From positions 34,038,001 through 34,102,000 of the forward strand of contig NC_043010.1 in assembly GCF_006345805.1 (NCBI RefSeq): a stretch of DNA of 64,000 nucleotides, written 5' to 3'. Shown here piece after piece: positions 1-62,549 of the stretch (position 1 is its first letter; each line of letters starts with the position of its first letter). The notes under the pieces were generated by a model. That model worked only from the letters and a program-made list of their open reading frames with translations, ran no database searches and was not told the DNA's origin. The position numbers were made by a program, and so were the translations under genes. This DNA comes from Octopus sinensis (lineage: Eukaryota).

Positions 1-79
1 TCAGGCAGTCGCGTGGATTCAGTCCGTAGGCTTTGTGACGGGACATCAACTCCTGCATTGGTTCAAGAATCACACACAG
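1..79 (-). CDS. LDB2: LDB coding exon 6 (LCVILEPMQELMSRHKAYGLNPRDCL...), truncated by the window edge
   Basis: Acceptor tttttctttttacag|CTG and the LCVILEPMQELMSRHK signature of the LCCD region. Confidence 0.96.
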   Translation of the reverse strand, partial: MCVILEPMQELMSRHKAYGLNPRDCL

Positions 80-3600: not shown

Positions 3601-6600
3601 AGTTTCCATCTGTTCATGTAAGCATGGATGTAAAAATGATGATGAATAACATTGATATTTGATATATCACACAAGGTTTCACATTTTGGAAACACTAACT
3701 TATAGTTAGCCACAGTACTTGATTTAATTGGCTCTCACAAAGATGAAATGTAAAGGGATGTAACTAAAAGGATGTTACCCTACTGATTCTGCCACTCACT
3801 ACCCCCATCTAAAAATAAAAATAAATACAAATTAATATAAAGGCCAGTTATAGAATAGTTTTCACAAGCACTGAGTGTTGCACCACCAACAAATGAGTTA
3901 TTAGATAGCTACCATACCTTCAAAAAATGGGAACACAGGGGTGACAGTGGAAAATTACTGTGAAGATATAAGACAGGGACTTGAAGGCTGTAGAATTCTG
4001 TCACTTCTGCTGCCAGGTGTTTGAATGACATCAGGGGACCCTCCTCTAATTGAATGCTATTGTATAGTCTTTCTCACATGACAGGCCCTTGGAGGCATAA
4101 TAACAATGTTACATTGAAAGAGGAGGGAGTTAGAAAAGAAATTACAGGTATCTATGAATTATTGATGCTAGTGACTACCAAACTGTACAGGAACGACCAG
4201 ACACCTGTTCCATGGTATTCCATAAACCAAGTACATAAATAACTCCACTTTGCCTGGTTCAGGGGCCTAGTGATAGCAACACCCACTGGTCATGCAAGCA
4301 GTCATTGATCCAGCATAAAAACCATGTTACTCTTGCAAGCAGAGAAAGATTACCAACAGAAGATCAAAGTTTCCATCAGCTCAGGCAGTAAAGCTTATAA
4401 CAATTTGTAAAGGATATTATCATAAGAGAAAAGTGCTTTATGCTAACATGGGGAACTGTATGCGAAACACTATGGCAGTAAGGGAGCTTAATAAAGAGCT
4501 CTCATCAAATAAGGTTATTTTAAAAATTTATCATATATTGCAAATGGCAAACAGGTGCCATTGTCTTAAGTCCCTCGATTATTGGTTCACAGCATTTCTG
4601 TTCATGGCAGAAACGACAAAGGTGTGTGAATAGCTTAATACAATATGCTTTCCATACAGTTTCTGCCGACCAAATCCTTCCTAATTCCGGGATAATAGAA
4701 GACACTTGCCCAAGCATTGCACAGTGGGTCAGAACCCAAATGACATGCTATCAATTATTAAATTCTGGTGTAATAGTGGGGTGACAGATAGAAGCTTTAA
4801 TGAATTACATTTATCTCGTGGATGTTTCAGCAGTTACTTGCTCACTCATAAGATATCTGTTACTCAATACACATAAACACCCACATGTATTGTTCATTTA
4901 TTTAAGATCCATTCTTCCATGGTAGCAGAGGTTAAATGGAGGCAGTGTTTTAGAGCTTATTGCTAACCCATGTGTTTTTTGTCTCAGGAATTGTCAACAT
5001 GACTGCTTTTGCTCATGTGGTTTCATGCTTAGATGCCACACAATGTAACCATCCACATGACAGGTTTCCATGCAGTCTGTTTACCAATTCCACTCACAAG
5101 GCATTGGTTGATAAAGGGCTATAGTAGAAGACCCAAGGTGCCACAGAGCAGGATTGAACCTGAAACCACTTGAAGCAAACCTGACCACACACCCATGCCT
5201 GGATCACATACACACACAAATAAAAAGGTACTAGATCGGAATTGATATGATTAACTAAAATACTTGAAGGTATGACCCCAGATTGTCTGCAGTCTAATAA
5301 TAAGTGTTCTGCTTTTGCTGAGGGTCTTTGCTGTCTGGTTACTCAGAACCCCCCCCCCCCCAACAATCTATCTCATTCTTCCCCATGATATATAACTTTA
5401 TTTACAAACATCTTTCTGTATTACAAGTAGGGAAGGTTGAGCAATAGAAATGCTTCTACAGCAAGGTTGTCTTAGTGTTAATCACACAACAGTAAAGTAA
5501 GGAAATTGAAAAATTTTTATTTCATTAATAGTTAAATTGGAGTAAGCAGAGTTGTGTGCCTTGGCCAAGGGAACAAGCACAATGGCAATAGTAGTAAGTG
5601 GTTTATTCTTTTACATGTTTCAGTCATTTGACTGTGGCCATGCTGGAACAAGATTAAAAAGATTTTTTTTTTAATGACAGCTATCAGTGGAACAAGCACT
5701 TTAACCTCAAAGTCAATGTATCTCATTGTTAGTATTTACTGGCACTGAAAGTTGCTGAATACCTGGTATTTGAATATATTAATACTTCTCCATGCAGTTT
5801 GGGCCTAGACATATGGGTTAAAAAAACAAAACAAACTAACAAAAACTGTCAGCTGTGTTGCCTTCCCTAATGGTGTGGCAATGGCCACATGCAGAGTCCC
5901 AGGAATTTTTCGATGGGAGGACACAAGATCAGAAGGGAATATAATTCCCAAAGAAAAGGGTGTAATAACATTATCTAGAAGGGCACACTTCTTTCTTGGA
6001 GTGGGGTGTGTGGGGATGGGAAGAATCCACTCCCCTCCAGACTTGCTAAAATGATAAAATCTTCAGTAATTATTCCCTTTACAGCACAAGCAAAAAAAAA
6101 CGAACAGGCCAACAAAGGACTTCCTTGTGCTTGCTCAGTCTGCTAGAAATAGCAAAAATAAAGGACACATCATATAATGCAGCCCCTGATATACAAAAAC
6201 ACAGGATGGCCATGGCTGGAATAGATCGGTAGCAACAGCAGTAAATTCAGAATGCCACAACAGTGGGTACATTTGATACAATGCACAGTATTGCAAAAAG
6301 CAATGCAGGTTGTATCTATTGTCTCTCCAATTTTTAAAGCAAATATTTGCTTTATACAAAAAAGTCAACTAAATCTTCACAATATCATGGTTAGTCCACA
6401 TTACTCTGTAAGGAGCATAGAGTCAGTTTCCCTGGAAGGGACATTGGTTCATTGCAGAATTACTCATTTTTAGAAGCTGAGTGGACCAGTGAAATGAAAT
6501 GTTTCGCTCAAGATCACAACACATCACTCAATCCAGGAATCAAAACCACAATCTTGCGATCATGAGTTCAACACACTAACCACTAAGCCATACACCTCCA

Positions 6601-6905: not shown

Positions 6906-6986
6906 CCGTAAAAAGTTAAGTGTATAATTTGTCAGACCCTGTCTAGTAATATTTTTACTTAATTGTTCAACCATAGCAGGATCTTG
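6906..6986 (-). CDS. LDB2: LDB coding exon 5 (QDPAMVEQLSKNITR...NFLR), 81 nt
   Basis: Acceptor ttcttctttcttttacag|CAA, donor CGG|GTGAGT. Confidence 0.96.
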
Positions 6987-8746: not shown

Positions 8747-8869
8747 CTGCATTGCTATTACACTTCTTGGAATTAATTCTCGATGTTGTCTGGTAGCAAA
8801 ATGCCATGATCGAATTCTCATGAGGTCATCAAATGTAAATTCTAAAATCAATCTTCCTTCAGTGACTAC
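8747..8869 (-). CDS. LDB2: LDB coding exon 4 (VVTEGRLILEF...SVIAMQ), 123 nt
   Basis: Acceptor ttatccaattctacag|GTA, donor CAG|GTAATG, and the EGRLILEFTFDDLMRI signature. Confidence 0.97.
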
Positions 8870-10286: not shown

Positions 10287-10459
10287 CTTAGTAAACATGG
10301 GTTTGCCATGATGGGTGATCATCATAGCCTGGTCACAGTCTAGTGAAATGGTTGTATTATGGAATGATTCTTTGGGATGTTTTAGTAAGTAGTAGAGATC
10401 TGTTATGCCACCTTCAAATATACTGCGAAAATAGCGAGGTATTAAAGTCCGTCCAATTG
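10287..10459 (-). CDS. LDB2: LDB coding exon 3 (TIGRTLIPRYF...KPMFTK), 173 nt
   Basis: Acceptor ttttccccatttcag|CA, donor AAG|GTACTG. Phase 1 to 0, consistent with the neighbouring exons. Confidence 0.97.
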
Positions 10460-13129: not shown

Positions 13130-13232
13130 TGTATCGTTTTAGACCATCTTCTAAACAGAATGTTAAAGTTAATGTTGCATCATCTTCAAAGAATTCTGTT
13201 GCAAAGGCATCCCACCAAAGATTATCACTTTC
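13130..13232 (-). CDS. LDB2: LDB coding exon 2 (ESDNLWWDAF...GLKRY), 103 nt
   Basis: Acceptor tttttatctcacag|GAA, donor ACA|GTGAGT, and the NLWWDAFATEFFEDDA signature. Confidence 0.97.
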
Positions 13233-17378: not shown

Positions 17379-18994
17379 GATATCATACAGAAAGATCACT
17401 ACACAGGGAATTCAGCAGAATCAAGCATCACGTGCAATTCCTATATATGTATGAACACACACACACATTTGGAAATGGAAATGGGGAGAAAAAAATTGCT
17501 ACGGTTGAGTGTATTTGTGCAAAGTCAATGGTTCGTTCCATAGCTATGTACGCGCGCACACGCAGATGTAGCGACCATAGAATGAATGAATACAAAGTTA
17601 AAAGAAAGTCTTTAGAGTTTAAGTTATTTGGTGGTAGTGGAGCAAGGAGTAATAGAAAAATATGTTTTAACCTGTGCCAGGTCATGTTGAAGTTGTATAA
17701 GAAACGGCAGTGCTAACTGATGTGTGCGTGTACACACAAACACGTGTAGTCATGGTCATGTGGTTAACAAGTTCGCTTCTTAATAATGTGGTTTTGTGTT
17801 TAGTCTCATTGCATGATACCCTGGGCACATGTGTTCTGTGATACCCAGGGACTGACAAAAGCCTTATAAGTGGATTTTATAGATGGAAACTGAAAGAAAC
17901 CCATTATACATCAGTCTGAGTTTGTTTACTTTTGCACTCCCTCCAAAATCGCATAGCTATGAGTGAAGTTGCTACCACTTCCTTTATCAACATGTCGGCT
18001 GCTGGCGTTGTACCTTTGATGACGTGTGGAATAAGATATCTCTTTGTAGAACAGGACATTCGGCTAGAAAAGAATGCCTCAAAACAACATATCTGTGCAA
18101 CCCATCACGGCATGGAAAAACGGATGGATAATAACAATAATAATAATACACACACATCATTCCTACATTTAATACCTGTTTATACACCTTAGCAGAGCGA
18201 CTGGCAATAATGCCAACACCATAACCATTTTGCTCAAGCAAGGAATACCAACATTTACAAGCGGGCGCCCACCTCCACAAAGGGCTTCTTTCAGCTTCTG
18301 CCTGCTCTAAGATTACAGAGAAGGCACACAAGGTACTGTGCAGCAGTACCAAACTCCAAAGCATGTCTTTGCAAAGCAAACTTCTTAACTGCAACTTTTG
18401 TGCATTTATACACATATCTACACACACACACATGCATATATAAACGCAAACACATATATACCTATTGTACAAATAGTCTTTTGCAGTTTCCATACTTTAA
18501 GTCATACAAGAAACAAAGAACTATGATTTGGTGCCTCAGATAGAAATGGAATGCTGGCAAGCTGGCAACCAGAAGAATGACAAATGCTTAAATGTTAGAA
18601 ATAAAGACGAGAAAACAACAAACTAGAAAAAAAAAAAATCCAAAATAAAAACAACCAAATCTAAAATTAAACTATGATAATAATGGTGCCTGATAGCTGA
18701 TGTCATTGACCCCCAGTGTTAGACTTGCACTTTATATTATTGATGGCAGAGGGGTGTGCTTTTTGACTTGGGCACAATGCCAGCATTTTTGAGGAGAGGA
18801 GTATTAGTCAATATTGTCAACTCAATACTAAACTGGCATTCTATTTTATTGACCCTGGAAGGATGAAATGCAAAGCTTGATCTCAGTGGAATTTGAACTC
18901 AGAATATAATTTTAGGCGCACTGCTAGCAATTTTGGTACGCAAGGGCATTATTGATACCACTGGCACTAGTACTTGATTGCTATCCTATTTCAA

Positions 18995-37970: not shown

Positions 37971-38084
37971 GTGTGACCGCGTGTGTACCGTTGGCGATTT
38001 TTTTCCTCTGTCTTCCTTCTTTCCTGAGCGTCCAATAATACTATATTTGTTCCACGTCCTCGTGTTGTGTTTTCTTGTTTGGAT

Positions 38085-38138
<54 letters not shown>

Positions 38139-41100
38139 AAAGCTATGCCCAGAATAATGCCACTCCAATAATTCTAGATCTGCTCAAGCAAATTTAGCAC
38201 TGGAGCCAACATAATCGTAACTCAAGCCAACGAAAGCATCTGTACATGACTGCCGGTGTGCTAGAAATATCAACAAAAACCTACCTCACATTACACTATA
38301 ACATCTTGTAGGTTTTGAGTTAATGAGGAAAGCCTCCACACGGTCAAGTAACCATGTGGAGTCAAATCTCTGCCAAATCGCACTGTGACATCTTAAAAAG
38401 AAGGGAAGGACGTCTTGGATAATGCAAACATAGATAAATACCTTATATTCGAAAACAAAACGGAGGGAAAGGTCGAGGTTAAATATCTTTGACCAGAGGC
38501 TTGCATATTTACTTGTCCAAGCACAACCAAATAAAGAACGTTATGACTTTTTTGTAATAGCCATACCTACAATTTTTGTAAGATTTGTTTTCTTTCATTC
38601 CACCTTTTCACGTCTTGTAAAAACAAAAGTTGATAGAGAATTCTATTGAACTGGATGATGATTTCCAATTCCGAGAGCTTGCAGCTCATTCATATAGAAT
38701 TACTGATTAAAAACACAGTGAATTTGGTTGTCTAAATCTCCAAAGAATCTTTTGAAGAAGATATTAACATAACATATTATCTTAAATTTGCACACCAAAC
38801 CCGTTCGTAAGGCGAACTGTAAGTGGTTGACATGAACACAGCTGACTACAGTCATCCGGACAGAGTTTGAACTTAAAAGCAAATATTGCAAGGCGATTTA
38901 TTACGGCGTTCTATCGTTTCTACTAACGTAATTAGAAACGGTAACTAATAACACTATGTCCAGAATAGAAAGATCTGATGTTCCGGCTTTAGTCAGTAGG
39001 TATGCTGGATCAAGGCTAGCCCGAAATTCAACAACATTTAAATATTTTCATACATCACAGTGGTACCCCAGTATGGCCATAGCAGAAAGGTTGAAAGCAA
39101 TCGAAAGAATAAAAGGATATATTTTAGTAAAGCAGACCGTATATACATCCGGGCGCTGTTTCAGTATGGCCAAGCAGCTAAAAAATTACGCTCACCAAAG
39201 AACAGCCTGTAAAACACGAGTATTTTTGGAAGAGCATCTTAACCAACTACAGAGCAGTTTCCACGTGGAGTAATTACAATAAGCACTAATAAAATTTCTT
39301 CAAGACCATATAGTAATTCATTGCGGGCAATGTTTGTTTAAGCCTCAGGTCAGCTGACAATGAGCAACCGTAACACCAAAAGCCTTCCAGTAGTGACCAT
39401 CCCGTCTTCTACAGACAGTGTATTTAGCACTACAATATCTATCTTTTTTTTTAACGCAACATGGGTTGTGATTTGACTGTTGTTTTTAATAGCTCGAGAG
39501 AATACCCAGTTCATTTTCCGTTTTCTTGATCATGTACGTTGTATTTGTATCGCCCCACGTCAGCTTTGCTTGAGCAAATCTCTAATTAAAAATATTCTAG
39601 CCCTGACTACTGTGTAGTGGTTCTCAACCAGGGCTCATATAAGATTTTGTGGTTAAAGTTTATGTGCAACAAATTAGTTATACTTCTATAATTCACAAAA
39701 CTTCTTATTTTGAAGCCTGTGATCCGGCGACAAGGTCTCGCAGATTGAGTGACGACAGAGGCTCCTTCGTTGGCTTGTGTGCGCTGTGTTGTGGACTGAT
39801 GTTATGCACGTTATAAGTCATGCAATCGTTTGTGTAGCTGTGTCAGCCCTGATCGAGCAGACTTATGATGATCAAAGATGCAATTCAGATACAGTGCATC
39901 TTAAAATATATAAACCATTGTATCCTTCCTTTCTTAAAACAGAATGTAACTAAAAGAAATTTAGACTGGTATTTCTAGCAAGTCAAATGACTACGTAGCG
40001 GTCCCATTATTGCTCGTTGTGTATGTGCAGTGCACTACATGTGCGCACGCCAGTGGTTTCCCATATATATAGAGTCCATATGTAAATGTTCGCTGGTGCT
40101 CTATATACTGTATCTCATAGGTCTACCTTTTTGAACATAAAACATGTTGAAAGGCCTTCTTACCAACGAGACACTCAGCATCTATAGGCGCGCTGCGATG
40201 TACGAATGTGTTGGTTATTACTATTATTATTAAACATGTGTAAGTGCGCGCGTAATTACGGCACAAATGTGTGCGTGTGTGTATATTAATTTGTGCCGTT
40301 TTTATGTATCTGCCGACAATATTTAAATGAAAGAATTTTCCCCCCAATGCTCACCAAATAATATAATTACAAGGAATTTGCAGGGACTCGTGTTTAGTCT
40401 GAGTCGACAAGAATCAATTTAAAAAAGAAATACACGTTCGCATTCCTCATTTTTTTATAACTGAGAAAAAAGTTGACTGAAGAGGGGAGGTAACTGTAAG
40501 GTAGGCGCGACATGGCTTACATTTTGGTCTTAGATTAATTATATTTCACTAATGAAGAGACAGAAAGAAGAACGATCGGTTCTCATTTAATACTAATTGA
40601 GAATATGAGCAATTAAGAATTGAATTTTTAATCAAGAATTTAAAACTAAATCTGAAAGAAAAACAAAACAAAAAATCTACTAAAACCAGAAGATGGTAGT
40701 TGGGAATAAGCGAAATGAGTTGAGTGGAGCAAGTTATTTCCCCGTTTACACACTCCAAGACATTTTTTTTTTTTATCCTTAAAAACATTGTTGGTAAAAC
40801 GTGAAAAAACAGTATTGAAGATTTCTTCAAAAATTTAAGATAATTTTACAGAACCAATCACAGAAATATTTGTTCATCAAGAAAAAACAATGCATCCTAA
40901 AGTTGTTGGCATCAGCTTTGAAATAAAATAATGGTGTAAAACACAGACAAAAAGCAAAAAAGAAATCTAGGCTTTTGCTAGAAATTAAAAAAATAATCTA
41001 AATTTAAGAAGCATTGTTTTTTTCTTTTTTCTTACTTTCAATTTAAAAAACAATTAAGTAGCATCGTCCATCTCGACAATTTCACAAATCTAAACAAGTA

Positions 41101-41415
41101 CAAGGCTTCTAAGTTACATGGCAGAGTGTTTTAAAAAATGTTTTTCATAATAAAATTAACAGCATTGTATTTTTGCTTAAATTTGCCTTTTTACAATTAA
41201 TTTACATATTTGAATTAACCATAAATAAGTAAATAAAACATTTTAAGCGCTGACTGCTTGCGTTTGTTTTAAGTTTCGTTATGAATAGAAAGAAAGCTTT
41301 TTTTTTCAAAGATCATCTTGCTCCGCGCGCATATTTTAGGTTTAGATGCGAAAACGTAAAGATTAACCAACCAAAACAAGAGATAAAATCTTAAAACATG
41401 GAAATCGGTACTTAC

Positions 41416-41541
41416 CTCTGTCCGTTGCTGCAGTCTTTTGTTTAAGTCGTATATCCGATATTCCGGTTGACCCATGTTGTTGTACGGCGTATGTCGCCTA
41501 TAGTAGGTAGAGAAAGACGAATAGAAAGGATCCGAATTCAT
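41416..41541 (-). CDS. LDB2: LDB coding exon 1 (MNSDPFYSS...QQRTE, 42 codons)
   Basis: ATG in a CCACCATG Kozak context. The N-terminus matches the LDB2-type DPFYSS..FYRRHTPY motif. The donor GAG|GTAAGT follows 41416 (phase 0). Confidence 0.93.
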
Positions 41542-41764
41542 GGTGGAAGAAGTTTATATATACTAGATATATAGATATATATACATACAGATAGATATAT
41601 TTATATCTATATATCAGAGGATGTATAATAAGATTATCTGCGATGAAGATTTTCAATGAGGGAGAAGACAAAATAAATTTAACTTTTGAATGTGTTGCTA
41701 TATATATTATATATGTACATATAGCACGTGTCCACTCTTCAATGGTGGTAACCAAGGGACCCCC
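41542..41764 (-). other. Probable 5' UTR part of the LDB2-type first coding exon
   Basis: A strong acceptor (T-run with one CG, then TAG) at 41765-41790 lies upstream of the Kozak ATG. Only two short uORFs lie between them. Confidence 0.5.
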
Positions 41765-41818
41765 CTAAAAAAAAAAAAAACGAAAAAAATGGAGATATGT
41801 GGTAGTTGACTGGGCTAC

Positions 41819-41841
41819 CCGTCCTTTGCTACGGATGTCAT
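41819..41841 (-). CDS. Candidate alternative start mini-CDS (MTSVAKDG) that could splice to 41497
   Basis: ATG ACA TCC GTA GCA AAG GAC GG|gtagcc ends in phase 2, in frame with tag|G CGA CAT (RHTPY). The donor is weak. Confidence 0.3.
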
Positions 41842-42649
41842 TCAGAATGACAAATATATCTACAAGTCCTTCTGAAGTCCAACTGGGGACCGATCTTTTC
41901 CATCGTTGACCACTAATGTGGTGTGGTTGTGGTGTTATGTTCTGTTGTCTGCTGGTGTTGCTGCTGTGATGGTTAGTGGTTGTTGGTATTTCACCACATC
42001 CCACCACCGTCTTTTTCATCAAAGCCGACCACTGGAGATTGAAACAAGCACCGGCGACAACATATCCACTTAAGAGAAAGAGAGAGAGAGAGATAGAGAT
42101 AGATAGAAAGAAAGGGAGAGAGAGAAATACAGTCTGCTTCGTGTTGTTGTCAGCGTCGACGCCAACGCGTTTTGAGTTTAACGATGTTGTTGTTGTTGTT
42201 GATGTTGCTGTTCATGTGCGGGGAGGAATGAGGAGAGTTAAAATTTCTGAACAAAGAAATGTGTAAGGCTTTTTTGAAAACTAAACTAAAATCTGGCAAC
42301 AACACCAATCCGTCGTCGTTCGGTACATGTTTCCTTTGAGAGAGAAAGAGAGAGAGAGAGAAACAAAGAAATTCTTTAAAAGAAATCTTCAAATATGCCC
42401 AAAGGAGTGGAGAAAAAGTGTAGTTAGTGGTAAATAAGCGACGACTGTACAATAATATAGTGGAGTTGATGAGTCCATGTGTAACGTCAGACAGGTGAAG
42501 CTATTTTTATCTGTAGCCTGGGCCAGAAACCCCATCCACAGCACGCTAGCTATAAGCTAGCACATAGCCAGGCTTCCTATCTCTCTTATGGTTAGACAAC
42601 ACACTTGCTTACACAGACACACGATGTGTATATATATATGTGTGTAGTC

Positions 42650-43190
42650 TTTAATTGCGACTGTTGTTGTTGTTGTTGGCGGCGGCGGCGGTAGTGGCAG
42701 TGAGGGTTTGCGCCAGATTGTATGTATGTAGTAGAGTGGTTGTTACTCTACTACCACTACCATAACGACTGCAGCAGCACTTGCTGCTGATACTACTACT
42801 ACTACTACTACTACTGCCAAAAAGAAAACACAACTGTTACCACTACTACTGCTACTACAAAACACAGCTACTGCTGCTGCTGCCGCTACTACTACTACCA
42901 CTACCTGCTGGCAGAACTACCACCATCACCACCACCCCCAACAACAACGGTAACAAGAACTGAACTACTACTTCGTTTACCACCACCGCTACTACTACTA
43001 CTACTTCGTTTACCACCACCACCGCTACTACTACTACTACTACTACTTCGATATCAATCGCTGGCACCACCGCTACCACAACACTAATATAGCTTTATCA
43101 TCACCGTTACCACCACCACCAGTAGTGCTACTGCTACATCACCATTATTATTATTATTAATGTATCGCCATCGCCATCAACAACTACTAA
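42650..43190. repeat. Compound (CTA)n/(CCA)n/(CTG)n trinucleotide low-complexity tract
   Basis: Directly visible. Similar tracts lie at 45980-46215, 47090-47345, 19930-20060 and 59150-59245. Confidence 0.9.
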
Positions 43191-43399
43191 ATGCTCAGTG
43201 TTCTCGTGTATGTATGCGTTTATGTATGTATTTGGAGCGCACGGCTTAAACTATATAGAGGAGTGTGTGAGTATGAGGGGCTTAGCCGGAGTACGCGTAC
43301 ATGTGTGTGTGTGTATATGTGTGCGTGTACGCAGCAAAGAACTCTGGGAAATTGACTGATAGTTGAGATAGTATAAGAACTAAATATTGAGTTGGTGAT

Positions 43400-43720
43400 T
43401 TTAGTGGAGGAATGGTGAGAGATAGAGATAGAGAGAAAGAGAGAGGAAGGAGGGATAAATCAACTGCAAGGACGAACGAGGGGAGGAGGAGAAAGATTAT
43501 AAGGTATGAGTGATGATTAGCAAGAGGGAAGGGGAGGAGGTAGGAATTGTGGTGGAAGGTGGTGGTGGGGAGAGAAAGAGAAACAGAGAAGGAAGAGCGA
43601 GGAAGGAGACGAAGAATACGTGAAAATTAGATAAGAGGGACAAGGGAGGAAGTCTAGATGAAGGTTAGATAAGAGAGAGAGAGAGAAAAATAGAAAAAAG
43701 AGAGACAGAAATGAGAGCAT
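43400..43720. repeat. Long purine-rich (GA) tract upstream of LDB exon 1
   Basis: About 320 bp of mostly G/A on the plus strand. Confidence 0.85.
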
Positions 43721-44289
43721 GTGTAAGGGGCATAGGGTGAGTTACATGAAACAGGGACAAACGATCTCCCACCTATTTCCCCACTTCCTCCAACTATTCG
43801 CTCGCCCTCTCTCACTCACACAGCAACACACGTAAAGCACAAAGTCAATAATACATAGACACACACATATATATATATATTATACACCCATTATATATAC
43901 ATATATAATATGTGCGTATATATATATATATAGGAAACACGCAAATCCAGCAAGATTAGTTGCATGTTGAAGCAAGTTTCTCAGGCTGACTAGCTACATT
44001 GCTAAAAAGCAGTGCAAGGTTTCAGACAACTACTGCTACTACCACTTCTGCTGCTGCTTCCTCTACTATTACTACTCCTGCTTCAGGCACCGACGTCGCC
44101 TTCACAATATATGATAGCAGTTGGTAGTTGAGAGACAGAGCGAGGGAGGGGAGATGAATGTTGAAGGCCGTGTATGTGTATGTTAGCATGTGTGAATGTG
44201 AGTGTGTGTACGTAACTAGCTCACTTCATCACACCACTGATATTGCTCTGGACCAACACACACACACACATTACCATTGAGACAAACGA

Positions 44290-44730
44290 GGAAGCCTCCT
44301 CTAATCGGTCGCACGATCTGCTTAGAAGCAACCAAATCTTCCCTCAAATAACACCCTAGTCTTTTTAAAAGGGATATTTATTCGATGGTCCTCGATGCAC
44401 AGTTTGAAATAAAAAGACGATATGGTCAGAGATGGAGTGCTTTTGTCTATAGGTTTGCTCGTTGCAGGTTTTTACTCGGGGCTATACAACACACCAAATC
44501 AATTAATGTTTGTATGCAAGCAAAAATTGTGGTAATGACCGTAGTCACTGGACCTGCTAGAAATAGTAGCTAAACTTCCCTTAATTCACACACAGACACA
44601 CTAGTGTTAAAAAAATAGGACACAAGTAGTCCTACATAAAACTATTTGAATAAAAGATGGGATGGACATGGCTGGAACGTCGCTAATCATAGGTGGGCTC
44701 GATTAGGGCTGATTTGGGTTTAAACAACAC
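44290..44730 (+). mobile_element. Two tandem copies of the (CAA)n-tailed repeat family C
   Basis: Motif CTGCTAGAAATAGCAGC.AAATCT.CCTCAAAT.ACACC...GATGG.CA..GCTGGAA...TTAAACAACA. Over a dozen other copies occur, e.g. 9960, 37060, 38180, 46270, 46590, 46880, 51570, 51910 and 62140. Confidence 0.75.
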
Positions 44731-46269
44731 AAGTTAATGGATCAGTGCAAGTACAGTAGTAATAGTAGTTCATAACTTCCTCTACATCCCTAACATAACA
44801 GCAACAATAAAAGAATATCACTTAGCCCCCAACAAAACACGTCACCATCGTCATCAACACTGAAACACCACCGCCATCACTAACACTAACAACAACACAA
44901 GCACAATTGTAAATATGGTGACCTTGTTTAGTGGTGGTTATTTATGTTTGTTCGTTTATTTTCAAATATAAACGTTATAAATATTCATGTTTGGCGAGAA
45001 AGAGAGAGAAAGAGGTATAAAGCAGCTTGTGCCTACGTGCAAATAGTAACATGGTAAGTGAAGGAGATGGGTGGAGTGTCAGGGTTGCGTTGATAATTGG
45101 TTGGTTGGTTGGTTGTTTCGTTAGTTGGCAGTAAAATAAGAAAGTAATAAGCAACTAAGCAAGAGCTCGTTGGTCCTCACTACCACTATTGTTGCCGCCG
45201 CTGCTGCTATCAAGTCCCTAGTTTTTAGTTCACAGTGAAGCGAGAGCACTTATTACAGAAAACTAGGCAAAAGAGTTGGTGCTAGCATCACACACCTACA
45301 ACTACCGACCGTTGCCAAGTTCCTAGTTGATTGTTGCTGGTGTTGTTAGCTCAGATTCAGCAAACCTATGACCAAAAAAGTTCCGGTCAGGTAAAAAAAA
45401 AGTACGGTCCTTTAACGTTATAAGATCAAATTTTGTTAAGTTAACTGTGCCTTATCTTTTCGGTACGATAAAATAAAGTACCAATCTGTACTATTCGGAT
45501 TATTATTCCCATTATGCATTCTAGATGTGAATGGAATTATAACACGTTGAAGCAATGCATCCTTTATAATGGATGTTAGGGTGTCGTTTGAGATTTGCTT
45601 ATTTTTAACATATCCCCTCCCTATTTGTTTAACTGCTTGGTTAGTAAAACAAGGAAGTAATTAAGCAACTATGCAAAAGTTAGAGATAGAATCACAAGCA
45701 CCACCACCACCACCCAGCGCTACAAAATCTATACATAGCTAGCTGGTTGCTTGGTAGTGAAAGCAAGAAAGTAATTAGCTACTAGACAAGAGTTGGTGCT
45801 AGCAACAGTACCACTATTGCTAAATCCCTAGTTGGCTAGTTGTTTTTTTTTATTTTTTACTTTTACGATCTATTTATTTATTTTTACAACATACACATCG
45901 ATTTTGTCCCATTTCTGTACTGACTAACTCGTGGTTCACTCATCAAACCTAATTTAAAAGACTTGACTTAGTGTCAACGTCAGTAGCAACAGCAACAGCA
46001 GTCACACCACTACTGCTACTACAACTACTACTACAATATTACCATTAGCCATAGCCACCACCACTACTACTATTAATACTACTCGCAGCTACGATCTCCG
46101 CCGCCGCCTCAGTTGCTGCTACTACTACTACTACTACCGTTACCCCTACAACTATCATTTCCTTTAAAATAACGCACCACTATCACTACTACCACCACCA
46201 CCACCACCACCATCAATATACCAAAGCAACAATAATACTTAATACCAACCAAACTCGAGCCAACCAGTG

Positions 46270-47090
46270 AGAGCATTTACGTGGTCACTCGTCGAGTTAG
46301 AAATAGCGACCATACCTCGCCTCACTCAAAATCACATCTTGTAAATAAATAAAGGGAAAGGACACGTTAGGTAACGAAATCCTACACACCCCTAAACAGA
46401 CAAAATGGTTGTGGCTGGAAATACGCATTGATCAGGGTTGACCTGGAGCTATAAACAACAACACATTACTAATATCACCATCACAACTAACACCGCCACC
46501 TTAATACCATTATTACTTCCTACACCACCCACCACCACCGCCCGCGCCAACAAAACAACTACAACGAGGGAAGCTCCCAATGAAGCCATTAGATCCGCTA
46601 GAAATAGCAGCAGAATTTCCTTCCTTCAATCCACCTCGCGTTATAAAAAAAAAGTGCGATCGTGTGTAAATGTGGGGACGTTGGACAATGTAGTTCTAGG
46701 TATATACAGACAAGATGGTCATAGCTGGAATGCCTTTGAACATTAGGATACTCAATCAAAACTGAACCACCACCACTTCTAATACTAAACGTAATAATAA
46801 TAACAATTTCTTTATTAGCCACAAGGGCACAGATGTGTATGCGGCAATAACACTACTTTTAAGAGCCAAACGAGGGAATCCGCTACATGGTCGTTCGAAC
46901 GGTTAGAAATAGCAGCAATATTTTCCTCAAACTACATCAAATCTTTTTATATATATATATAGACAAGATACATTTGATAATGCAGACTTATAAACCACTA
47001 AAAAGACGAGATGGTCATGACTGGTATACCTTTTGATCATAGGTCGTCTGCTCAATCACGGTTGACCTGGGGTTAAACAACACTAACATT
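46270..47090 (+). mobile_element. Three family C copies separated by simple repeats
   Basis: Repeated TAGAAATAGC...GGATAATG...GACCTGG..TAAACAAC motif. Confidence 0.7.
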
Positions 47091-47980
47091 AATACCACTA
47101 CTAATAATACTATGAACACCACCAGTATCATCAGCATTATCAACACAACTTCCCTCCTCCACCAGCAGCAGCAGTACCATCACCCCCTATCTCCACCACC
47201 ATAGCTACTACCAACATCACCATTACCACCATCACCACTAGCAGCAGCACCACTACCACCACGAACATTACCACCACCACTTCCAGCAGCAGCAGCAGTA
47301 CCACCACCATCACCACAACAGTAACACTACCACCACCAGCACAACACCGTGAGAAGGTCGTCAGTTCTGAACGTTGTATCAGACGACACATTGCACAAAT
47401 ATTTCTAGGTCATCAGTTGCAAGTCTCAAAACCAAAACCAAATTTAAAAAAAGAAAAGAAAAAGAAAACATCCAAGAGCAGAGAGAAAGAAATGAAAGAA
47501 AAAAAAAAGAGGATAATGAATGATAAAACCTTTAAATTTTAACAGAAATGTTCTGAAAGAAGCTGACTTTACGTATAAAACATCTCCAAAACTCAAGAGA
47601 TTTTTTTTTTTAAGTTGGAAAATAATGCACTGTACAATTTAATTTTTTTTTTAAATGTACATTTGAAATTTACTCATACACATACACACATACAAACATG
47701 CATACACACACAAACACTTTAAAAGATAAGATGCATTTCGTTCTTCTTTTGTCTTTAACTCTGTTTCTAATGGACAGACAAGCAGAGAGGAATGATGGGC
47801 GCTCTTTTCAACGACAGTCAGGTCTGTGAAATGCAAGTAATAAGCCCAATCTAGCTGTGAATATGTAGCCCCTGTTTCAAGCTGTTCATATTTTAGTAAT
47901 TGATGTTAAATACATAAGATTTATGAATGACTATGAGTGTGCGTATGTATATTTATGTGTGTGTGTGTATGTATATATAT

Positions 47981-58035: not shown

Positions 58036-60424
58036 TTAATATAGTCCTGCCAGATACAAAGCAACATCTCTACAGGGCCACCTTAGCAGCATTATAGAAC
58101 CCTGAACAAATCAATGCAGTGGGTCCTAAAATATTTATTTATTGGCAGCAAGCCACAGTATACATAGATCAGAAGTGGGTCCCCAGGGCAAACCCACTGT
58201 GCCTATGCCTTAAGACAGCATGGCAACTCTAATGCTGGTTCCATGACAAAATGTACCTAGTACATACAATAAAGAGGCTGCAGTTAGGAAGGGCATCCAT
58301 TCATAGCAACTGTAGCAGAAGTGAAATGCCCAATTAATACTTGGTCCTCTGACCCGGCTAGGAGGGCTAATAGCCCTGAATAAGAAGTGATGTGATTTTG
58401 CACTGTGATAATTCTGCCTAACCCATGCCAGCATGGAAAGTAGGCACATGATGATGATGATAATGGTGGTGGTGATCTAGAGTAAAATGGAAGATTGCAG
58501 CTGACCACAGGCAATCAGTACATTGTAATCCAGTTACTGCCTCTGGGTTATTCTATCGATGAGAGTAAAGTACCTAAGTCAAAGACATTTAACTCTCAAC
58601 AATAGAATTTGCCTAACCGATACTAGTGGATACTGCCACATGGTAGAACAAAATCACTGCTGTAAATAGTACTGTACTAACCATTCAAATCCACCACATT
58701 TAATTTCAGTCAATGGTAGTGAAGCTAAGGTCTTCAATGGGTTACAGTCTGCATGGTGAGGAGTTAAAACAATCTCACCACGAGGTTTGCATGACTTAAC
58801 AAAAATTAGTTCGAATTTTGCTTCCTTGTTGTAATAAGTTGTCTAGGAAAGAAAGATATAAGGAAAAAGAAGCTAAAAAAAAATTAAAACTTTTTGTTTA
58901 AATCCCATCCGTAACAAAATGGACGACCTGGTTCAAAGTTCATTTTCCTAAAGTTTAAAATTAAACCACACCCATCTTGTAACTTTTTCCCCCAAAGTCA
59001 AAGTGACATGTTTAAATAAGTCTAAAAAGTATATTATTTCAACCAATAGTATTTTTTTAAAATGTCCCTCTATGTAAATAACCTATTCTTAGTTGAAAAT
59101 TGTCTGGTCTCCATTGTTTAATGTAGCTTTGACTTATTTAACTCCCTCTGCCATCGCCACCACTGCTGCTGCTGCTACCTTCCACACCACCACCGCTGCC
59201 GCTGCCACCACCACCAGCACAGCCATCATCATCATCATCATCACCACTTTAACATCTATTTTGCAAAATATTGTATAGATCTACTGTATATACTACAACA
59301 GTTATGTATCTGTATCCTGCACATTTATTTCAGAGGGGATTTTTGATTGGCAGGATGGGAAGTAGAAAGACAGTTCCTGGTGGGACAAGCGAAGGAGCAA
59401 GAAAGAGATAGAGAAAGAGAGAACTAACAGGAGCGAAGATAAATTTCAAAGGGAGTGTGGCACATTGTATCTAATGAGAGATAGTTATTTTTTTTTTACA
59501 AAAAAAGGAAAAGAAAACAGAAACTGAAATTCCATCTAAAAAATTTGAAGAAGTCCATTTTGGCGGTTTAGATATATTTTTTGCTTTCTTGGTTTGAATT
59601 ACACAGTTTCTATAATGAAACAGAGGAGATTAAACTGCGTCCAGGAGTGAGATCCTGGTTAAAGAGTTCCAGAGTTTTGAAGAGTGTGGAATTACTTCTT
59701 AGCCACTACTGCTCCTAGGTCTATGCTGACCTGGGATAGTAGCAGCAGTCAGAGTTTCTGTTATGGAATTGCCTCTGGAAGGCAGTCAGTCACAGACACC
59801 TCAATGGGTCCAAGACAGATGAGGTCCTTCAGCAATTTAGCGGTTCATCAAAGAGAAGATAACTCCATACAAATCCTGCATCCTGACAACTGCTGGGCTC
59901 ATGTCATTTGACCAATACAAGTTTAAAGGATGAGAGTGGGACTGGCTGTATACAAACCAAGCCTACTATAGTAATATTTACTATGCAGGTTGTTCAGCAA
60001 ACCAATACCATCACACTTTCTTCATAAGTTCAGAGGCAAGGAAAGGAGGTGACATGAATAGGTAGAGGATGCTATCGGAAGTCTGTAGCTTTGGCACTAC
60101 ATACAAATAACTATAGGAGAGAGATGCTTTCTGGTTGTATTTTCTTAAATCTTCATTCATTGAAGCAGTAGGAGAGTCCAACAACAACAACAAAAGAGAA
60201 ATATAGAAATAATACATTTCTAAATCTCTCAGAGAGATTTATGCAGTAGTGATACGATAAAGTAGTTGTATGCTGTCAACTTAATGTGACAGTCCCACGA
60301 AGGGAGTAATACTACTGCTATTTAGCCCTAGGAAGCAGCACCACTTCCTGTCAGCCGTGACACATTTCCAGTGTCCTTATGTTTACAAGAGGGAGATAAG
60401 CACCTCCACCCAGCTAAGCCAGCA

Positions 60425-60467: not shown

Positions 60468-61309
60468 GTAGCTTGGCTTGCTTGTTGGAGATGCTTAATT
60501 TCCCTATCCTTCAAGGATAAGAAGCTGGTCTTTGTCACAGAAAACTTGGTGCTGTGAGCTAACGAAATGTGTATTATCCTTATAATGCTGCCACTGTACA
60601 CGGAAGTGAACTGGGCAAACCACTCTATCTTCTTGGAACCATATGAAGTTGGGGATTGAGCTCAGGTGTTTAGAGTTAAATGCCTTTAATATAAACATGC
60701 AGGTATACTAGCATATACTAATTTTCTCTAAAGAGAGAGAGAGTGAAAGAAAAATGAAAAATAAAGAGAGAAAAAAATGTTGACCTATCTGGAAGGATTT
60801 TCCTGTTACTTGAACCAAATCTAAAAAAAGGTTACAAAATATCAATAATTGTTTACCTTTCGAATAAGGAGTCAATTTGAAATAACATATTACCAAAGAC
60901 ATATCTTCACTACAGATGTGTGTCTGCATGTGTGTATGTAGAATGTGTAAAATCAAGACAAAAAAAAATACTCATTATCAACTTATCTTTTGACTAACAC
61001 AAAACTATTTTGAACAAACCTTCCTTGATGAGAAATAGTTCATAAACAACTGCACTTAAAATTACACATCTATAATTGCAGTTGTAATGAATGTGAAGTA
61101 AAATGAATTCAGTGAATCCATTCCCAAACCTCAAAAGCCCATAGGGTCTTTACATAATTCTGGGTTTCTATAATATTGAAGAGAGAGAGAGAGAGAGAGA
61201 ATTCCTCTTGGGTATGAAGTTAGTGTATTGCAGATAATTTTCTCCTAAATCCTGGCCAGGTGCCTACTGTATATGCATTTGTAAAGAAGACTTAGCCTAT
61301 CATCTAGCT

Positions 61310-61589
61310 CAATGGTTCCCAAAGTGGGCAGTATCCTCCCTCCCCAACTGGGGATGGTGGAAAGTTTCAAGGGGGTGTTGAAGAAAAGAAGGGCGATAAT
61401 GGGGTAGCGATTTATGTAAAAACAACAGAATAATGGGCTCATTAGGTTAAGTTTTATATGTGAAATATAGTTGCTTTGAATTTGCTTCAGAAAGTGATCT
61501 ATGTTTGTGATGGTTAGTTGGGGTGGGGGCACTAGGAATGTGGTCTGGGTGTCAAGGGGGTTGCAGCCTGCAAAGTTTGGAAACCACCG
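61310..61589. mobile_element. hAT (Charlie-like) MITE, 280 bp
   Basis: Perfect 8-bp TSD ATCTAGCT (61302-61309, 61590-61597). TIRs CAATGGTTCCCAAAGT / AGTTTGGAAACCACCG. Confidence 0.85.
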
Positions 61590-62549
61590 ATCTAGCTGAA
61601 GGATGCTCTTAGCAGAGTCCATTTTGTTGTAAGCACTGATGGGTGGATGGCCAAGTTTCTGGTCTGAAGAAAATTGCTTCAAGATATTGACTCCGTCACA
61701 CATACCCTCTGCTAGCCACAGAACACCAAGAAAAGGCCATAAGCATTGACCTTTTTTCTTTATCTAAGCCTTATAAAAAAACTTCTAGCAACCCAATAGG
61801 AACTCCCCTATTCAGGTCCCATAAGAGCCAATTCTTAACTTGGATGGCTCCAACAAATGGGACATAACTTCCAATCCTTCTAACAGAATTCCAATTTATC
61901 TTGGAAAACATTCCTGGTCAGTCTGTGACTGATTTCAGACGACTAAGTGAATTCAAGTAATGTAGAATAAAGTGTTCTACCGAAGAAACTGTTTACAAAA
62001 TGTTTGCAATAAATCTGAACTAATGAAGGCATATGTGTATAGGTGGGGAAGTTAAAAGTTAAAAATAATACTGATAATCTGAAAATTATTACATTTGATC
62101 TATAAAATAGGAGACATCCACTCTTATTGACATAGAGCTGGTCTGTAAGTGGTCACTCAGCTTGCTAGAAATAGCTGCCAAGATCTCTCAAATCATACCG
62201 GTCAGTCTTAAAAGAAAATGGATGGAATAATATGATCCTACATACACTGTCTGAAATAAAGGTAAAAAGGTCACAATTGGAATGTCTTTGATTAAAAGTC
62301 TGCTATTCGGTGCTCATCTGGAGTCAAACAATAAGCCTGTAATGTGGCTTTATATTTGTTATTCTGAGTTTCAGGATGTTTTTTTCATATTTGTTCTATT
62401 TTTAGTATTTATTTTGAGACAGAAGGAGAGTGCTTTTAGATTTTACAGCTTTGGTGAATGTTAAGAGTTATAACATGAATGATGCAGTCCCCATAGATAC
62501 AGGAAAAACTCCAGCTAGAGCCAATCAAGAAACCCCACATATCCAGGAT

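What the first reader, a model, noticed from the sequence alone, without database searches (positions are those of the whole stretch)
41416..41541. The LDB2-type N-terminus is written on top of an LDB1-type splice acceptor
Seen: on the minus strand the codons for DPFYSSFSTYY read tcctttctattcgtctttctctacctactaTAG|G CGA CAT ACG. This is a ~30-nt polypyrimidine tract plus AG (41500-41498), leaving an 82-nt exon that starts in phase 2 with one base and then RHTPY. Knowledge (from memory, verify): vertebrate LDB2 starts MSSTPHDPFYSSPFGPFYRRHTPY within its first exon. Vertebrate LDB1 instead splices a different N-terminus onto a phase-2 exon that begins one base before RHTPY. Inference: this single invertebrate gene may make both N-terminal types, and the vertebrate paralogues may each have kept one ancestral alternative first exon. 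The conserved F/Y/S/P-rich peptide would then partly reflect splice-site constraint.
Basis: partly seen in the sequence, partly recalled or inferred. Interest (0 to 1): 0.8.

Follow-up and report, generated by a model that had tools for sequence, protein, structure and literature searches.

The report
Dual-use first exon in octopus Ldb
The octopus Ldb (LIM-domain-binding) gene has an exon that either starts the protein with an LDB2-like peptide or is entered halfway through a splice acceptor hidden in that peptide's codons. The second route gives an LDB1-like start, an old arrangement that databases already annotate but no paper seems to describe.

Summary
On the minus strand ATG 41541 opens MNSDPFYSSFSTYYRRHTPY. 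The codons tat-AGG give a 25-nt, 80% pyrimidine tract plus AG (41499-41498), and an 82-nt phase-2 segment (41497-41416) ends at GTAAGT.

The acceptor appears real. Predicted isoforms of three Octopus species join an LDB1-like leader (MPVQPIPAPLDREHGIA) exactly there. A 36-nt phase-2 cassette that I found in the window (60820-60785) accounts for the longer isoform base for base. No reads were inspected.

A fish ldb1a locus has its intron at the same nucleotide and phase. The same overlap occurs in Lottia, a hemichordate and a spider, and Capitella keeps the fused exon with an AG there. In a beetle the DPFY exon is separate, with a phase-2 donor at that nucleotide.

- Cartilaginous-fish LDB2 still makes both leaders, so the split between the paralogues was asymmetric.
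- The peptide is not conserved because of splicing. It is equally pyrimidine-rich where it is no acceptor (beetle; catfish LDB2, which has CGG instead of AGG). Only the AG tracks acceptor use.

This is a hybrid first/internal exon, a known kind. It is annotated in databases but apparently undescribed in the literature.

The parts
41416..41541 (-). Hybrid exon, first-exon form: ATG 41541-41539, 42 codons MNSDPFYSSFSTYYRRHTPYNNMGQPEYRIYDLNKRLQQRTE, donor GTAAGT from 41415, phase 0
   Evidence: 100% identical to O. bimaculoides A0A0L8GJW7 (P0001) and to the N-terminus of O. vulgaris P0333. In-frame TAA at 41556-41554.
41498..41524 (-). Internal 3' splice site inside the leader codons: 25-nt tract ctattcgtctttctctacctactat (80% pyrimidine) plus AG 41499-41498. 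The AG is the first two bases of Arg15 (AGG).
   Evidence: The annotated isoforms ...HGIA|RHTPY and ...LPDR|RHTPY require exactly this junction.
41416..41497 (-). Internal-exon form: the 82-nt phase-2 segment (g + RHTPY...RTE) shared by both protein types. It is homologous to the 76-nt RHTPY exon of vertebrate LDB1.
   Evidence: L003: cctgcAG|G AGG CAC ACG ... ACA GAG|gtaggg. PDB constructs of the LDB1/LDB2 dimerisation domain start within a few residues of RHTPY.
60785..60820 (-). 36-nt cassette exon (a ttt ggt tca agt aac agg aaa atc ctt cca gat ag): acceptor tttttttag at 60822-60821, donor gtcaac from 60784, phase 2 in and phase 2 out
   Evidence: It encodes the FGSSNRKILPD insert of P0002, P0222 and P0223. 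GC+a gives Ala and ag+g(41497) gives Arg. When it is skipped, GC+g gives Ala, as in P0003, P0004 and P0327.
38001..47000 (.). CpG-rich, GC-elevated domain centred on the hybrid exon; candidate proximal promoter region for the DPFY form
   Evidence: It holds nine of the ten highest 1-kb CpG o/e bins (0.60-0.97 against a window median of 0.20). The kilobases holding the other exons are at 0.11-0.28.
13130..13232 (-). Ldb exon 2 (ESDNLWWDAF...KRY, ends in phase 1), after a 28-kb intron
10287..10459 (-). Ldb exon 3
8747..8869 (-). Ldb exon 4
6906..6986 (-). Ldb exon 5
1..79 (-). Ldb exon 6 (LCVILEPMQELMSRHK...), which runs off the window

Best explanation
The window holds the 5' half of the single octopus Ldb/Chip gene (minus strand). 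Exon 41541-41416 is a hybrid first/internal exon.

Proximal route: transcripts that start just upstream of it, probably within the CpG-rich domain at 38-47 kb, have no donor upstream. The internal AG is therefore read as codons, and translation from ATG 41541 gives the LDB2-type leader MNSDPFYSSFSTYYR followed by RHTPY.

Distal route: transcripts from a promoter beyond the window (the gene spans about 186 kb in O. vulgaris) carry the LDB1-type leader ...MPVQPIPAPLDREHGI, which ends in a phase-2 donor (GC|gt). They splice to AG|G at 41498|41497, either directly or through the 36-nt phase-2 cassette at 60820-60785. The DPFY codons are then removed as the 3' end of the intron, where they serve as its polypyrimidine tract.

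Both products share everything from RHTPY onwards, which is where the folded dimerisation domain begins. The two forms therefore differ only in an N-terminal tail.

The arrangement is old. The same AG|G phase-2 site is an internal acceptor under a DPFY-type leader in a limpet and a hemichordate, and a spider and an annelid keep the fused exon with the AG. In vertebrate LDB1, which has lost the DPFY leader, it is the plain acceptor. In a beetle it is the donor of a separate DPFY exon.

Shown here: sequence, phases, the homologous intron, and recurrence on DNA. Inferred: actual usage in octopus RNA (from predicted models), the proximal promoter, and the evolutionary polarity.
For: Sequence and phase.

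Isoforms joined exactly at the site: O. vulgaris P0002-P0004, P0321 and P0332; O. bimaculoides XP_014780388-90; the O. sinensis isoforms listed among X2-X11. The DPFY form is P0001 and P0333.

The cassette found independently in the window reproduces both junction codons.

LDB1 intron at the same nucleotide and phase: L003.

Lottia L001: ttc tat AG|G, plus an unannotated MQMRMPGQLMMSPMDRDPGM+GC|GTAAGT exon 7.7 kb upstream that matches the Patella X3 isoform.

Ptychodera L006: the acceptor used by annotated isoform X1 lies under an in-frame MMAAADFSPFAALYYR leader.

Spider L007 and Capitella L002 are fused with AGG and AGA.

Beetle L004: tat tac AG|gtgaga.

Both leader types are annotated within one species in at least ten species.

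Logan contigs of 1.4-3.4 kb encoding 340-440-aa proteins of either type are too short to hold introns, so they look like spliced mRNAs from other invertebrates.

CpG domain. Boundary of the folded domain.
Against: No RNA reads, CAGE or RACE data could be inspected. The octopus isoforms are Gnomon or pipeline predictions.

Among the RefSeq octopus isoforms I could list, none carries the DPFY start. That form rests on the 2015 O. bimaculoides model and one O. vulgaris model.

The distal exon and its donor are outside the window, and the O. vulgaris DNA was not retrievable.

No clear branch point was identified.

The cassette donor (gtcaac) is weak.

CpG richness is only circumstantial evidence for a promoter.
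Confidence: 0.85

Rival explanations
1. The tract plus AG is only a by-product of F/Y/S/P and Arg codons: a cryptic site that is never used. On this view the LDB1-type octopus models are annotation artefacts.
For: The peptide alone forces 66-70% pyrimidines and gives an AGR codon one time in three. The same pyrimidine content occurs where the site is not an acceptor.
Against: Three independent annotations place the junction at this exact base. The in-window cassette fits it in phase. LDB1 has its intron at the same place. AGR is present in 5 of 5 fused non-teleost lineages and is lost in catfish LDB2. Short Logan contigs that look like mRNAs show the same join in other molluscs.
Confidence: 0.05
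2. The exon is only an internal exon in octopus. MNSDPFY... would then be a relic ORF in the intron, and the DPFY protein is no longer made, as in vertebrate LDB1.
For: The RefSeq octopus isoforms that could be listed all have the LDB1-type leader. No transcript-start data are available.
Against: The 14-codon leader is intact, starts with an ATG just after an in-frame stop, and keeps the DPFYSS-F-x-YYR pattern shared with vertebrates, spiders and annelids. The O. vulgaris annotation includes it (P0333). The only CpG-rich domain in the window is centred on it.
Confidence: 0.1
3. The overlap is a secondary condition. The ancestor would have had a separate DPFY exon, as insects do, and independent intron losses fused it to the RHTPY exon. 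The leftover exon-end AG and the pyrimidine-rich codons would then have recreated an acceptor by chance.
For: The beetle has a phase-2 intron at exactly this nucleotide. An exon-end AG|G is the usual proto-splice-site context.
Against: The fused state is seen in mollusc, annelid, hemichordate, vertebrate LDB2 and a chelicerate. The split state is seen only in the insects sampled, so parsimony favours a fused ancestor. No non-bilaterian outgroup was examined.
Confidence: 0.2

Closest known systems
Vertebrate LDB1 (CLIM2/NLI) 5' exon structure
   Same: A leader of the type ...MLDRDVG ends in a phase-2 donor. An optional small phase-2/2 exon follows. The acceptor AG|G lies one base before the Arg of RHTPY, and the exon ends after ...TE in phase 0 (L003). 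The octopus long leader CCFEKSVKLKLEGVNFAPNG also resembles GCSSKSFKLYSPKEPPNG of the 411-aa LDB1 form.
   Different: In LDB1 the sequence upstream of the acceptor is ordinary intron (56% pyrimidine, no DPFY ORF). The 45-nt PTPMYPPTYLEPGIG mini-exon is unrelated in sequence to the octopus 36-nt cassette.
Vertebrate LDB2 (CLIM1) first exon
   Same: ATG, DPFYSSPF-x-FYRRHTPY and ...TE lie in one exon with a phase-0 donor (L005). The octopus leader aligns at 69% identity over residues 7-49. Shark and chimaera LDB2 also make an LDB1-type leader joined at |RHTPY.
   Different: Catfish LDB2 has CGG instead of AGG, so there is no AG at the site, and no LDB1-type exon was found within 10 kb upstream. 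Whether mammalian LDB2 keeps a usable AG was not tested here.
Hybrid first/internal exons (Fiszbein and co-workers; PMC8769537, PMC11797052)
   Same: One exon is used either as a transcription-start exon or as an internal exon through a 3' splice site inside it, with one shared donor.
   Different: Here the 3' splice site lies inside coding sequence of the first-exon form, so its tract doubles as conserved codons. The arrangement is shared across phyla, whereas the published survey describes human exons.
Insect Chip/Ldb alternative first exons
   Same: Both leader types exist (…DPFYCSPFGSPYYR and …VDRMDQG) and join RHTPY in phase 2.
   Different: The DPFY exon is separate, with donor AG|gtgaga and an 18-kb intron in Ignelater. 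Two acceptors 18 nt apart add or omit SLPVPR.
Partition of splice forms between paralogues after duplication (PMC4417111, PMC4494069)
   Same: An ancestral gene with two alternative N-termini gave rise to paralogues known by different N-termini.
   Different: The partition is asymmetric: LDB1 lost one form, while LDB2 kept both in cartilaginous fishes. LDB is not mentioned in the main text of PMC4417111. Its supplements were not held.

Membership tests
Ldb/Chip/CLIM LIM-domain-binding gene | LIM_bind dimerisation/LCCD region (PF01803) | tested here: met
   The spliced window protein is 100% identical to octopus Ldb proteins carrying PF01803. It matches PDB LDB1/LDB2 dimerisation domains at E=1e-113.
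Ldb/Chip/CLIM LIM-domain-binding gene | C-terminal LIM-interaction domain (PF17916) | not testable with these tools
   The 3' half of the gene lies outside the window. Full-length octopus proteins P0001, P0002 and P0222 carry PF17916.
Hybrid first/internal exon | Used as an internal exon through a 3' splice site within it | tested here: met
   Met at annotation level only. Isoforms from three Octopus species are joined at 41498|41497, and the in-window cassette is phase-compatible. Junction reads were not inspected.
Hybrid first/internal exon | Also used as a first exon with its own transcription start | tested here: inconclusive
   DPFY-start models P0001 and P0333, a stop just upstream of the ATG, and a CpG-rich domain centred on the exon. 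No CAGE or RACE data.
Hybrid first/internal exon | Same 5' splice site in both uses | tested here: met
   Both protein types continue ...QQRTE|ESDNLWW. The donor is GTAAGT at 41415.
LDB1-type phase-2 intron before RHTPY | Intron at the homologous nucleotide and phase | tested here: met
   L003 reads cctgcAG|G AGG CAC and the window reads ctatAG|G CGA CAT. In both the exon ends after TE in phase 0.
Complementary partition of splice forms between ohnologues | The unduplicated outgroup gene makes both forms | tested here: met
   Octopus, Haliotis, Sinanodonta, Lineus and several insects by annotation. Lottia and Ptychodera by my reading of the DNA.
Complementary partition of splice forms between ohnologues | Each paralogue retains only one of the forms | tested here: not met
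   Callorhinchus LDB2 makes both (P0099, P0194) and Heterodontus LDB2 carries the LDB1-type leader (P0202). The core is 92% identical to mammalian LDB2 against 72-79% to LDB1.

The most novel reading that the evidence does not exclude
The overlap of DPFY codons with the phase-2 acceptor is the ancestral bilaterian state. It would be a dual-use first/internal exon kept for more than half a billion years in molluscs, annelids, hemichordates, chelicerates and vertebrate LDB2, and split only in insects. The textbook difference between LDB1 and LDB2 N-termini would be its two outputs, partitioned asymmetrically after the vertebrate genome duplications. On this reading the two tails have distinct, still unknown functions in front of the dimerisation domain.
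Probability: 0.5. Interest if true: 0.5.

Novelty: new member of a known kind. Interest (0 to 1): 0.4.

Why it matters
LDB1 and LDB2 are central enhancer-looping and LIM-factor adaptors, and their differing N-termini have had no stated origin or function. This analysis shows that both tails are outputs of one ancient exon arrangement, and that the junction sits at the edge of the folded dimerisation domain. That gives a clean handle on the isoforms: a synonymous AGG-to-CGG change should remove the LDB1-type isoforms without altering the DPFY protein, and an ATG mutation should do the reverse. It also gives a well-dated example of a coding hybrid exon. It corrects a tempting inference as well. 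The pyrimidine-rich peptide seems to have supplied the splice signal. The splice signal did not shape the peptide.

Tried and rejected
- Fetching the octopus locus failed. P0002 and P0323 are not on record. The gene range of P0332 is 186 kb, so no DNA was served. A mammalian LDB1 look-up (P0122) also failed.
- The distal leader exon (MPVQP..., CCFEKS..., MQSS...) is not in the window. A 6-mer hit, SSDFVL at 58661, is flanked by stops and is a chance match.
- No LDB1-type exon turned up by regular-expression scan in the 10 kb upstream of Capitella or the spider, nor in catfish LDB2. The scans were crude, so absence is not shown.
- The sigma-70 promoter and terminator scan does not apply to a eukaryote and was disregarded.
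- ORFs 17987-18493 and 61245-61703 have no Pfam match.
- Six full-text searches found no paper on the dual LDB leaders. LDB is absent from the main text of PMC4417111.
- I considered whether LDB1's PTPMYPPTY mini-exon derives from the DPFY leader. I rejected this as a post-duplication event because chimaera LDB2 has both in one gene.

Full report
**1. What is in the window.**

The window is AT-rich (36% GC). It carries the 5' half of a LIM-domain-binding (Ldb/Chip/CLIM) gene on the minus strand.

| Exon | Coordinates | Note |
|---|---|---|
| 1 | 41541-41416 | phase-0 donor GTAAGT |
| 2 | 13232-13130 | follows a 28-kb intron |
| 3 | 10459-10287 | |
| 4 | 8869-8747 | |
| 5 | 6986-6906 | |
| 6 | 79 to <1 | runs off the window |

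The spliced 228-aa product is 100% identical to Octopus proteins (O. bimaculoides A0A0L8GJW7 = P0001, and O. vulgaris models). The window is therefore from an octopus of the bimaculoides/sinensis/vulgaris group. The three species are identical over this part of the protein, so I cannot say which one.

**2. The observation.**

- ATG 41541 opens MNSDPFYSSFSTYYRRHTPY.
- The codons ...tac tat AGG CGA CAT place an AG at 41499-41498.
- The 25 nt before that AG are 80% pyrimidine.
- 41497 is a G followed by RHTPY codons, and the segment to the donor is 82 nt.
- An in-frame TAA at 41556-41554 makes this ATG the first possible start.

As an acceptor, the site is comparable to the gene's other acceptors (pyrimidine fraction 0.72-0.96). 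Only 7 sites of this quality (YAG|G with >=80% pyrimidine) exist on this strand in 64 kb.

Given the peptide, though, most of the signal is forced. Synonymous recoding of the same peptide yields 66-70% pyrimidines. The observed 80% is only marginally higher (p = 0.02-0.09). An AGR arginine codon has a prior of one third.

**3. Is the acceptor used?**

Annotated proteins say yes.
- O. vulgaris models read MPVQPIPAPLDREHGIA|RHTPYNNMGQ (P0003, P0004).
- Others read MPVQPIPAPLDREHGIA-FGSSNRKILPD-R|RHTPY (P0002, P0321).
- RefSeq O. bimaculoides X1-X3 and the O. sinensis isoforms listed have the same leaders, with a longer N-terminal extension. O. sinensis X11 lacks the insert.

I then searched the window for these peptides. 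The distal exon is absent. The insert is present as a 36-nt exon at 60820-60785, with acceptor tttttttag| and donor ag|gtcaac.

That exon begins with one base and ends with two, so it passes phase 2 through.
- Cassette included: GC+a gives Ala, then the insert, then ag+g(41497) gives Arg.
- Cassette skipped: GC+g(41497) gives Ala.

Both junction residues in the annotated proteins are reproduced exactly. That is possible only if the acceptor is 41498|41497.

These are predicted models. I could not inspect reads.

**4. The LDB1 comparison.**

Isoform variants of vertebrate LDB1 imply these exon blocks: (…GCSSKSFKLYSPKEPPNG…MLDRDVG)(PTPMYPPTYLEPGIG)(RHTPY…WTE).

On DNA of a loach ldb1a (L003) I read the following:
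- GTG GG|gtaaga, the donor of the MLDRDV exon;
- cag|T CCA ACA … ATG GG|gtcagt, a 45-nt mini-exon;
- cctgcAG|G AGG CAC ACG … ACA GAG|gtaggg, the RHTPY exon.

The LDB1 intron therefore lies at the same nucleotide and phase as the octopus internal acceptor, and the exon ends at the same place.

**5. Recurrence.**

At least ten species have both leader types annotated.
- Molluscs: O. vulgaris, O. bimaculoides, Haliotis rubra, Sinanodonta.
- Nemertean: Lineus.
- Insects: Belonocnema, Zootermopsis, Nilaparvata, Diabrotica.
- Vertebrate: the chimaera Callorhinchus (LDB2).

Reading the homologous site on DNA gave this table:

| Species (locus) | Sequence at the site | Arrangement |
|---|---|---|
| Octopus (window) | tac tat AG\|G CGA CAT | fused; both forms annotated |
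| Lottia (L001) | ttc tat AG\|G CGT | fused; unannotated exon …MQMRMPGQLMMSPMDRDPGM+GC\|GTAAGT 7.7 kb upstream, matching the Patella X3 isoform |
| Ptychodera (L006) | tat tac AG\|G AGA | acceptor used by annotated X1; unannotated in-frame leader MMAAADFSPFAALYYR lies over it |
| Trichonephila (L007) | tat ttt AG\|G AGG | fused |
| Capitella (L002) | ctg tac AG\|A CGC | fused |
| Ignelater beetle (L004) | tat tac AG\|gtgaga | separate DPFY exon; 18-kb intron, then two acceptors 18 nt apart (with or without SLPVPR) |
| Triplophysa ldb1a (L003) | cctgc AG\|G AGG | ordinary intron |
| Pangasianodon LDB2 (L005) | ttc tac CG G AGA | fused, no AG at the site |

Several Logan contigs of 1.4-3.4 kb encode full 340-440-aa proteins of either type. 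They are too short to contain introns and so look like spliced mRNAs from other invertebrates.

**6. Corrections to the interpretation.**

(a) Partition between the paralogues. Callorhinchus LDB2 X4 and Heterodontus LDB2 X1 carry …KLYSPQE…MLDRDMG-PAYPSSFTEPDMG|RHTPY on a core that is 92% identical to mammalian LDB2 and 72-79% to LDB1. Callorhinchus ldb2a also has the DPFY start. Bird LDB2 models join unrelated leaders at |RHTPY. So LDB2 inherited both leaders, and LDB1 lost the DPFY one. The partition is asymmetric.

(b) Splice-site constraint on the peptide. The 25 nt before the site are 72-80% pyrimidine in the fused lineages with an AG at the site. They are 76% in catfish LDB2, which has no AG, and 76% at the end of the beetle DPFY exon, which is a donor. 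The peptide is conserved in all of them. The tract is therefore a consequence of F/Y/S/P codons and shows no splicing constraint. The peptide more likely supplied a ready-made tract. Only the AG tracks use: AGR in 5 of 5 fused non-teleost lineages against CGG in the catfish. That sample is small and not phylogenetically independent.

**7. Mechanism.**

The exon is a hybrid first/internal exon.
- Proximal starts read through the AG and translate the DPFY leader.
- Distal transcripts splice into the AG and discard those codons as intron.

The junction coincides with the start of the folded dimerisation domain, because all PDB constructs of LDB1 and LDB2 begin within a few residues of RHTPY. The isoforms therefore differ only in an N-terminal tail.

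The only large CpG-rich domain in the window (38-47 kb) is centred on this exon. Its 1-kb bins reach CpG o/e 0.60-0.97, against a window median of 0.20 and 0.11-0.28 around the other exons. This fits a proximal promoter but does not prove one.

What the tails do is unknown. A link between the DPF/SPF motifs and the NPFxD pockets of the Chip/LDB-SSDP complex (PMC6800368) is speculation only.

**8. Known or new.**

Hybrid first/internal exons are a described class (PMC8769537; PMC11797052 reports about 80,000 in human). Partition of splice forms between paralogues is also established (PMC4417111, PMC4494069).

The octopus isoforms are already in RefSeq and ENA. Six full-text searches found no paper describing the two Ldb leader types, their shared phase-2 site or their relation to LDB1 and LDB2. 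The library searched is limited to open-access papers.

I therefore rate this as a new member of a known kind, of moderate interest.

**9. Polarity.**

The fused state occurs in a mollusc, an annelid, a hemichordate, a chelicerate and vertebrate LDB2. The split state occurs only in the insects sampled. Parsimony favours a fused ancestor, but no non-bilaterian, amphioxus or tunicate locus was examined, so this remains an inference.

Noticed in passing
window 38001-47000: This is the only large CpG-rich, GC-elevated domain in the window (CpG o/e 0.60-0.97 against a median of 0.20). It is centred on the DPFY exon and is likely a hypomethylated promoter region.
   Followed up: partly
window 41555-41614; 42791-43047; 47195-47342: A (TA)n microsatellite abuts the ATG. 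TAC/CTA triplet arrays and a 36-mer repeat lie upstream. A long ACC/45-mer repeat accounts for the GC-skew dip at 46-48 kb.
   Followed up: no
L001:2211-2311 (Lottia gigantea KB203854.1): An unannotated LDB1-type exon (…ITLDGIPMQMRMPGQLMMSPMDRDPGM + GC|GTAAGT) lies 7.7 kb upstream of the annotated DPFY start. The public Lottia gene model misses this isoform.
   Followed up: yes
L006:13453-13499 (Ptychodera flava): An unannotated in-frame DPFY-type leader (MMAAADFSPFAALYY, ATG at 13453) lies directly over the acceptor used by annotated isoform X1.
   Followed up: yes
L006 ~4699-4743 and L003 12458-12502: A 45-nt phase-2/2 mini-exon sits in the same slot and has the same length in a hemichordate (AMYNHEHLKSYEPK) and in vertebrate LDB1 (PTPMYPPSYMEPGM), with a shared xMY…YxEP pattern. 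It probably predates vertebrates. The octopus 36-nt cassette in that slot is unrelated in sequence.
   Followed up: partly
L004:23393 and 23411 (Ignelater luminosus): Tandem acceptors 18 nt apart (cgtag|A TCT CTG CCT GTT CCC AG|G) explain the optional SLPVPR seen in many insect Chip/Ldb isoforms.
   Followed up: yes
outside the window (octopus proteins P0222, P0223): The long octopus leader …CCFEKSVKLKLEGVNFAPNG-MPVQP resembles the vertebrate LDB1 411-aa leader …GCSSKSFKLYSPKEPPNG…MLDRD. That extension therefore also seems to predate vertebrates.
   Followed up: no
window 17987-18493 (-) and 61245-61703 (-): Two ORFs of 168 and 152 aa lie in Ldb introns and have no Pfam match. The 16-18 kb area is a minor second CpG-rich patch.
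   Followed up: partly
window 41482-41471: The octopus protein has NNMG where other lophotrochozoans have MG (RHTPY-NN-MGQPEY), a two-residue insertion. This makes the shared segment 82 nt, against 76 nt in fish LDB1.
   Followed up: no
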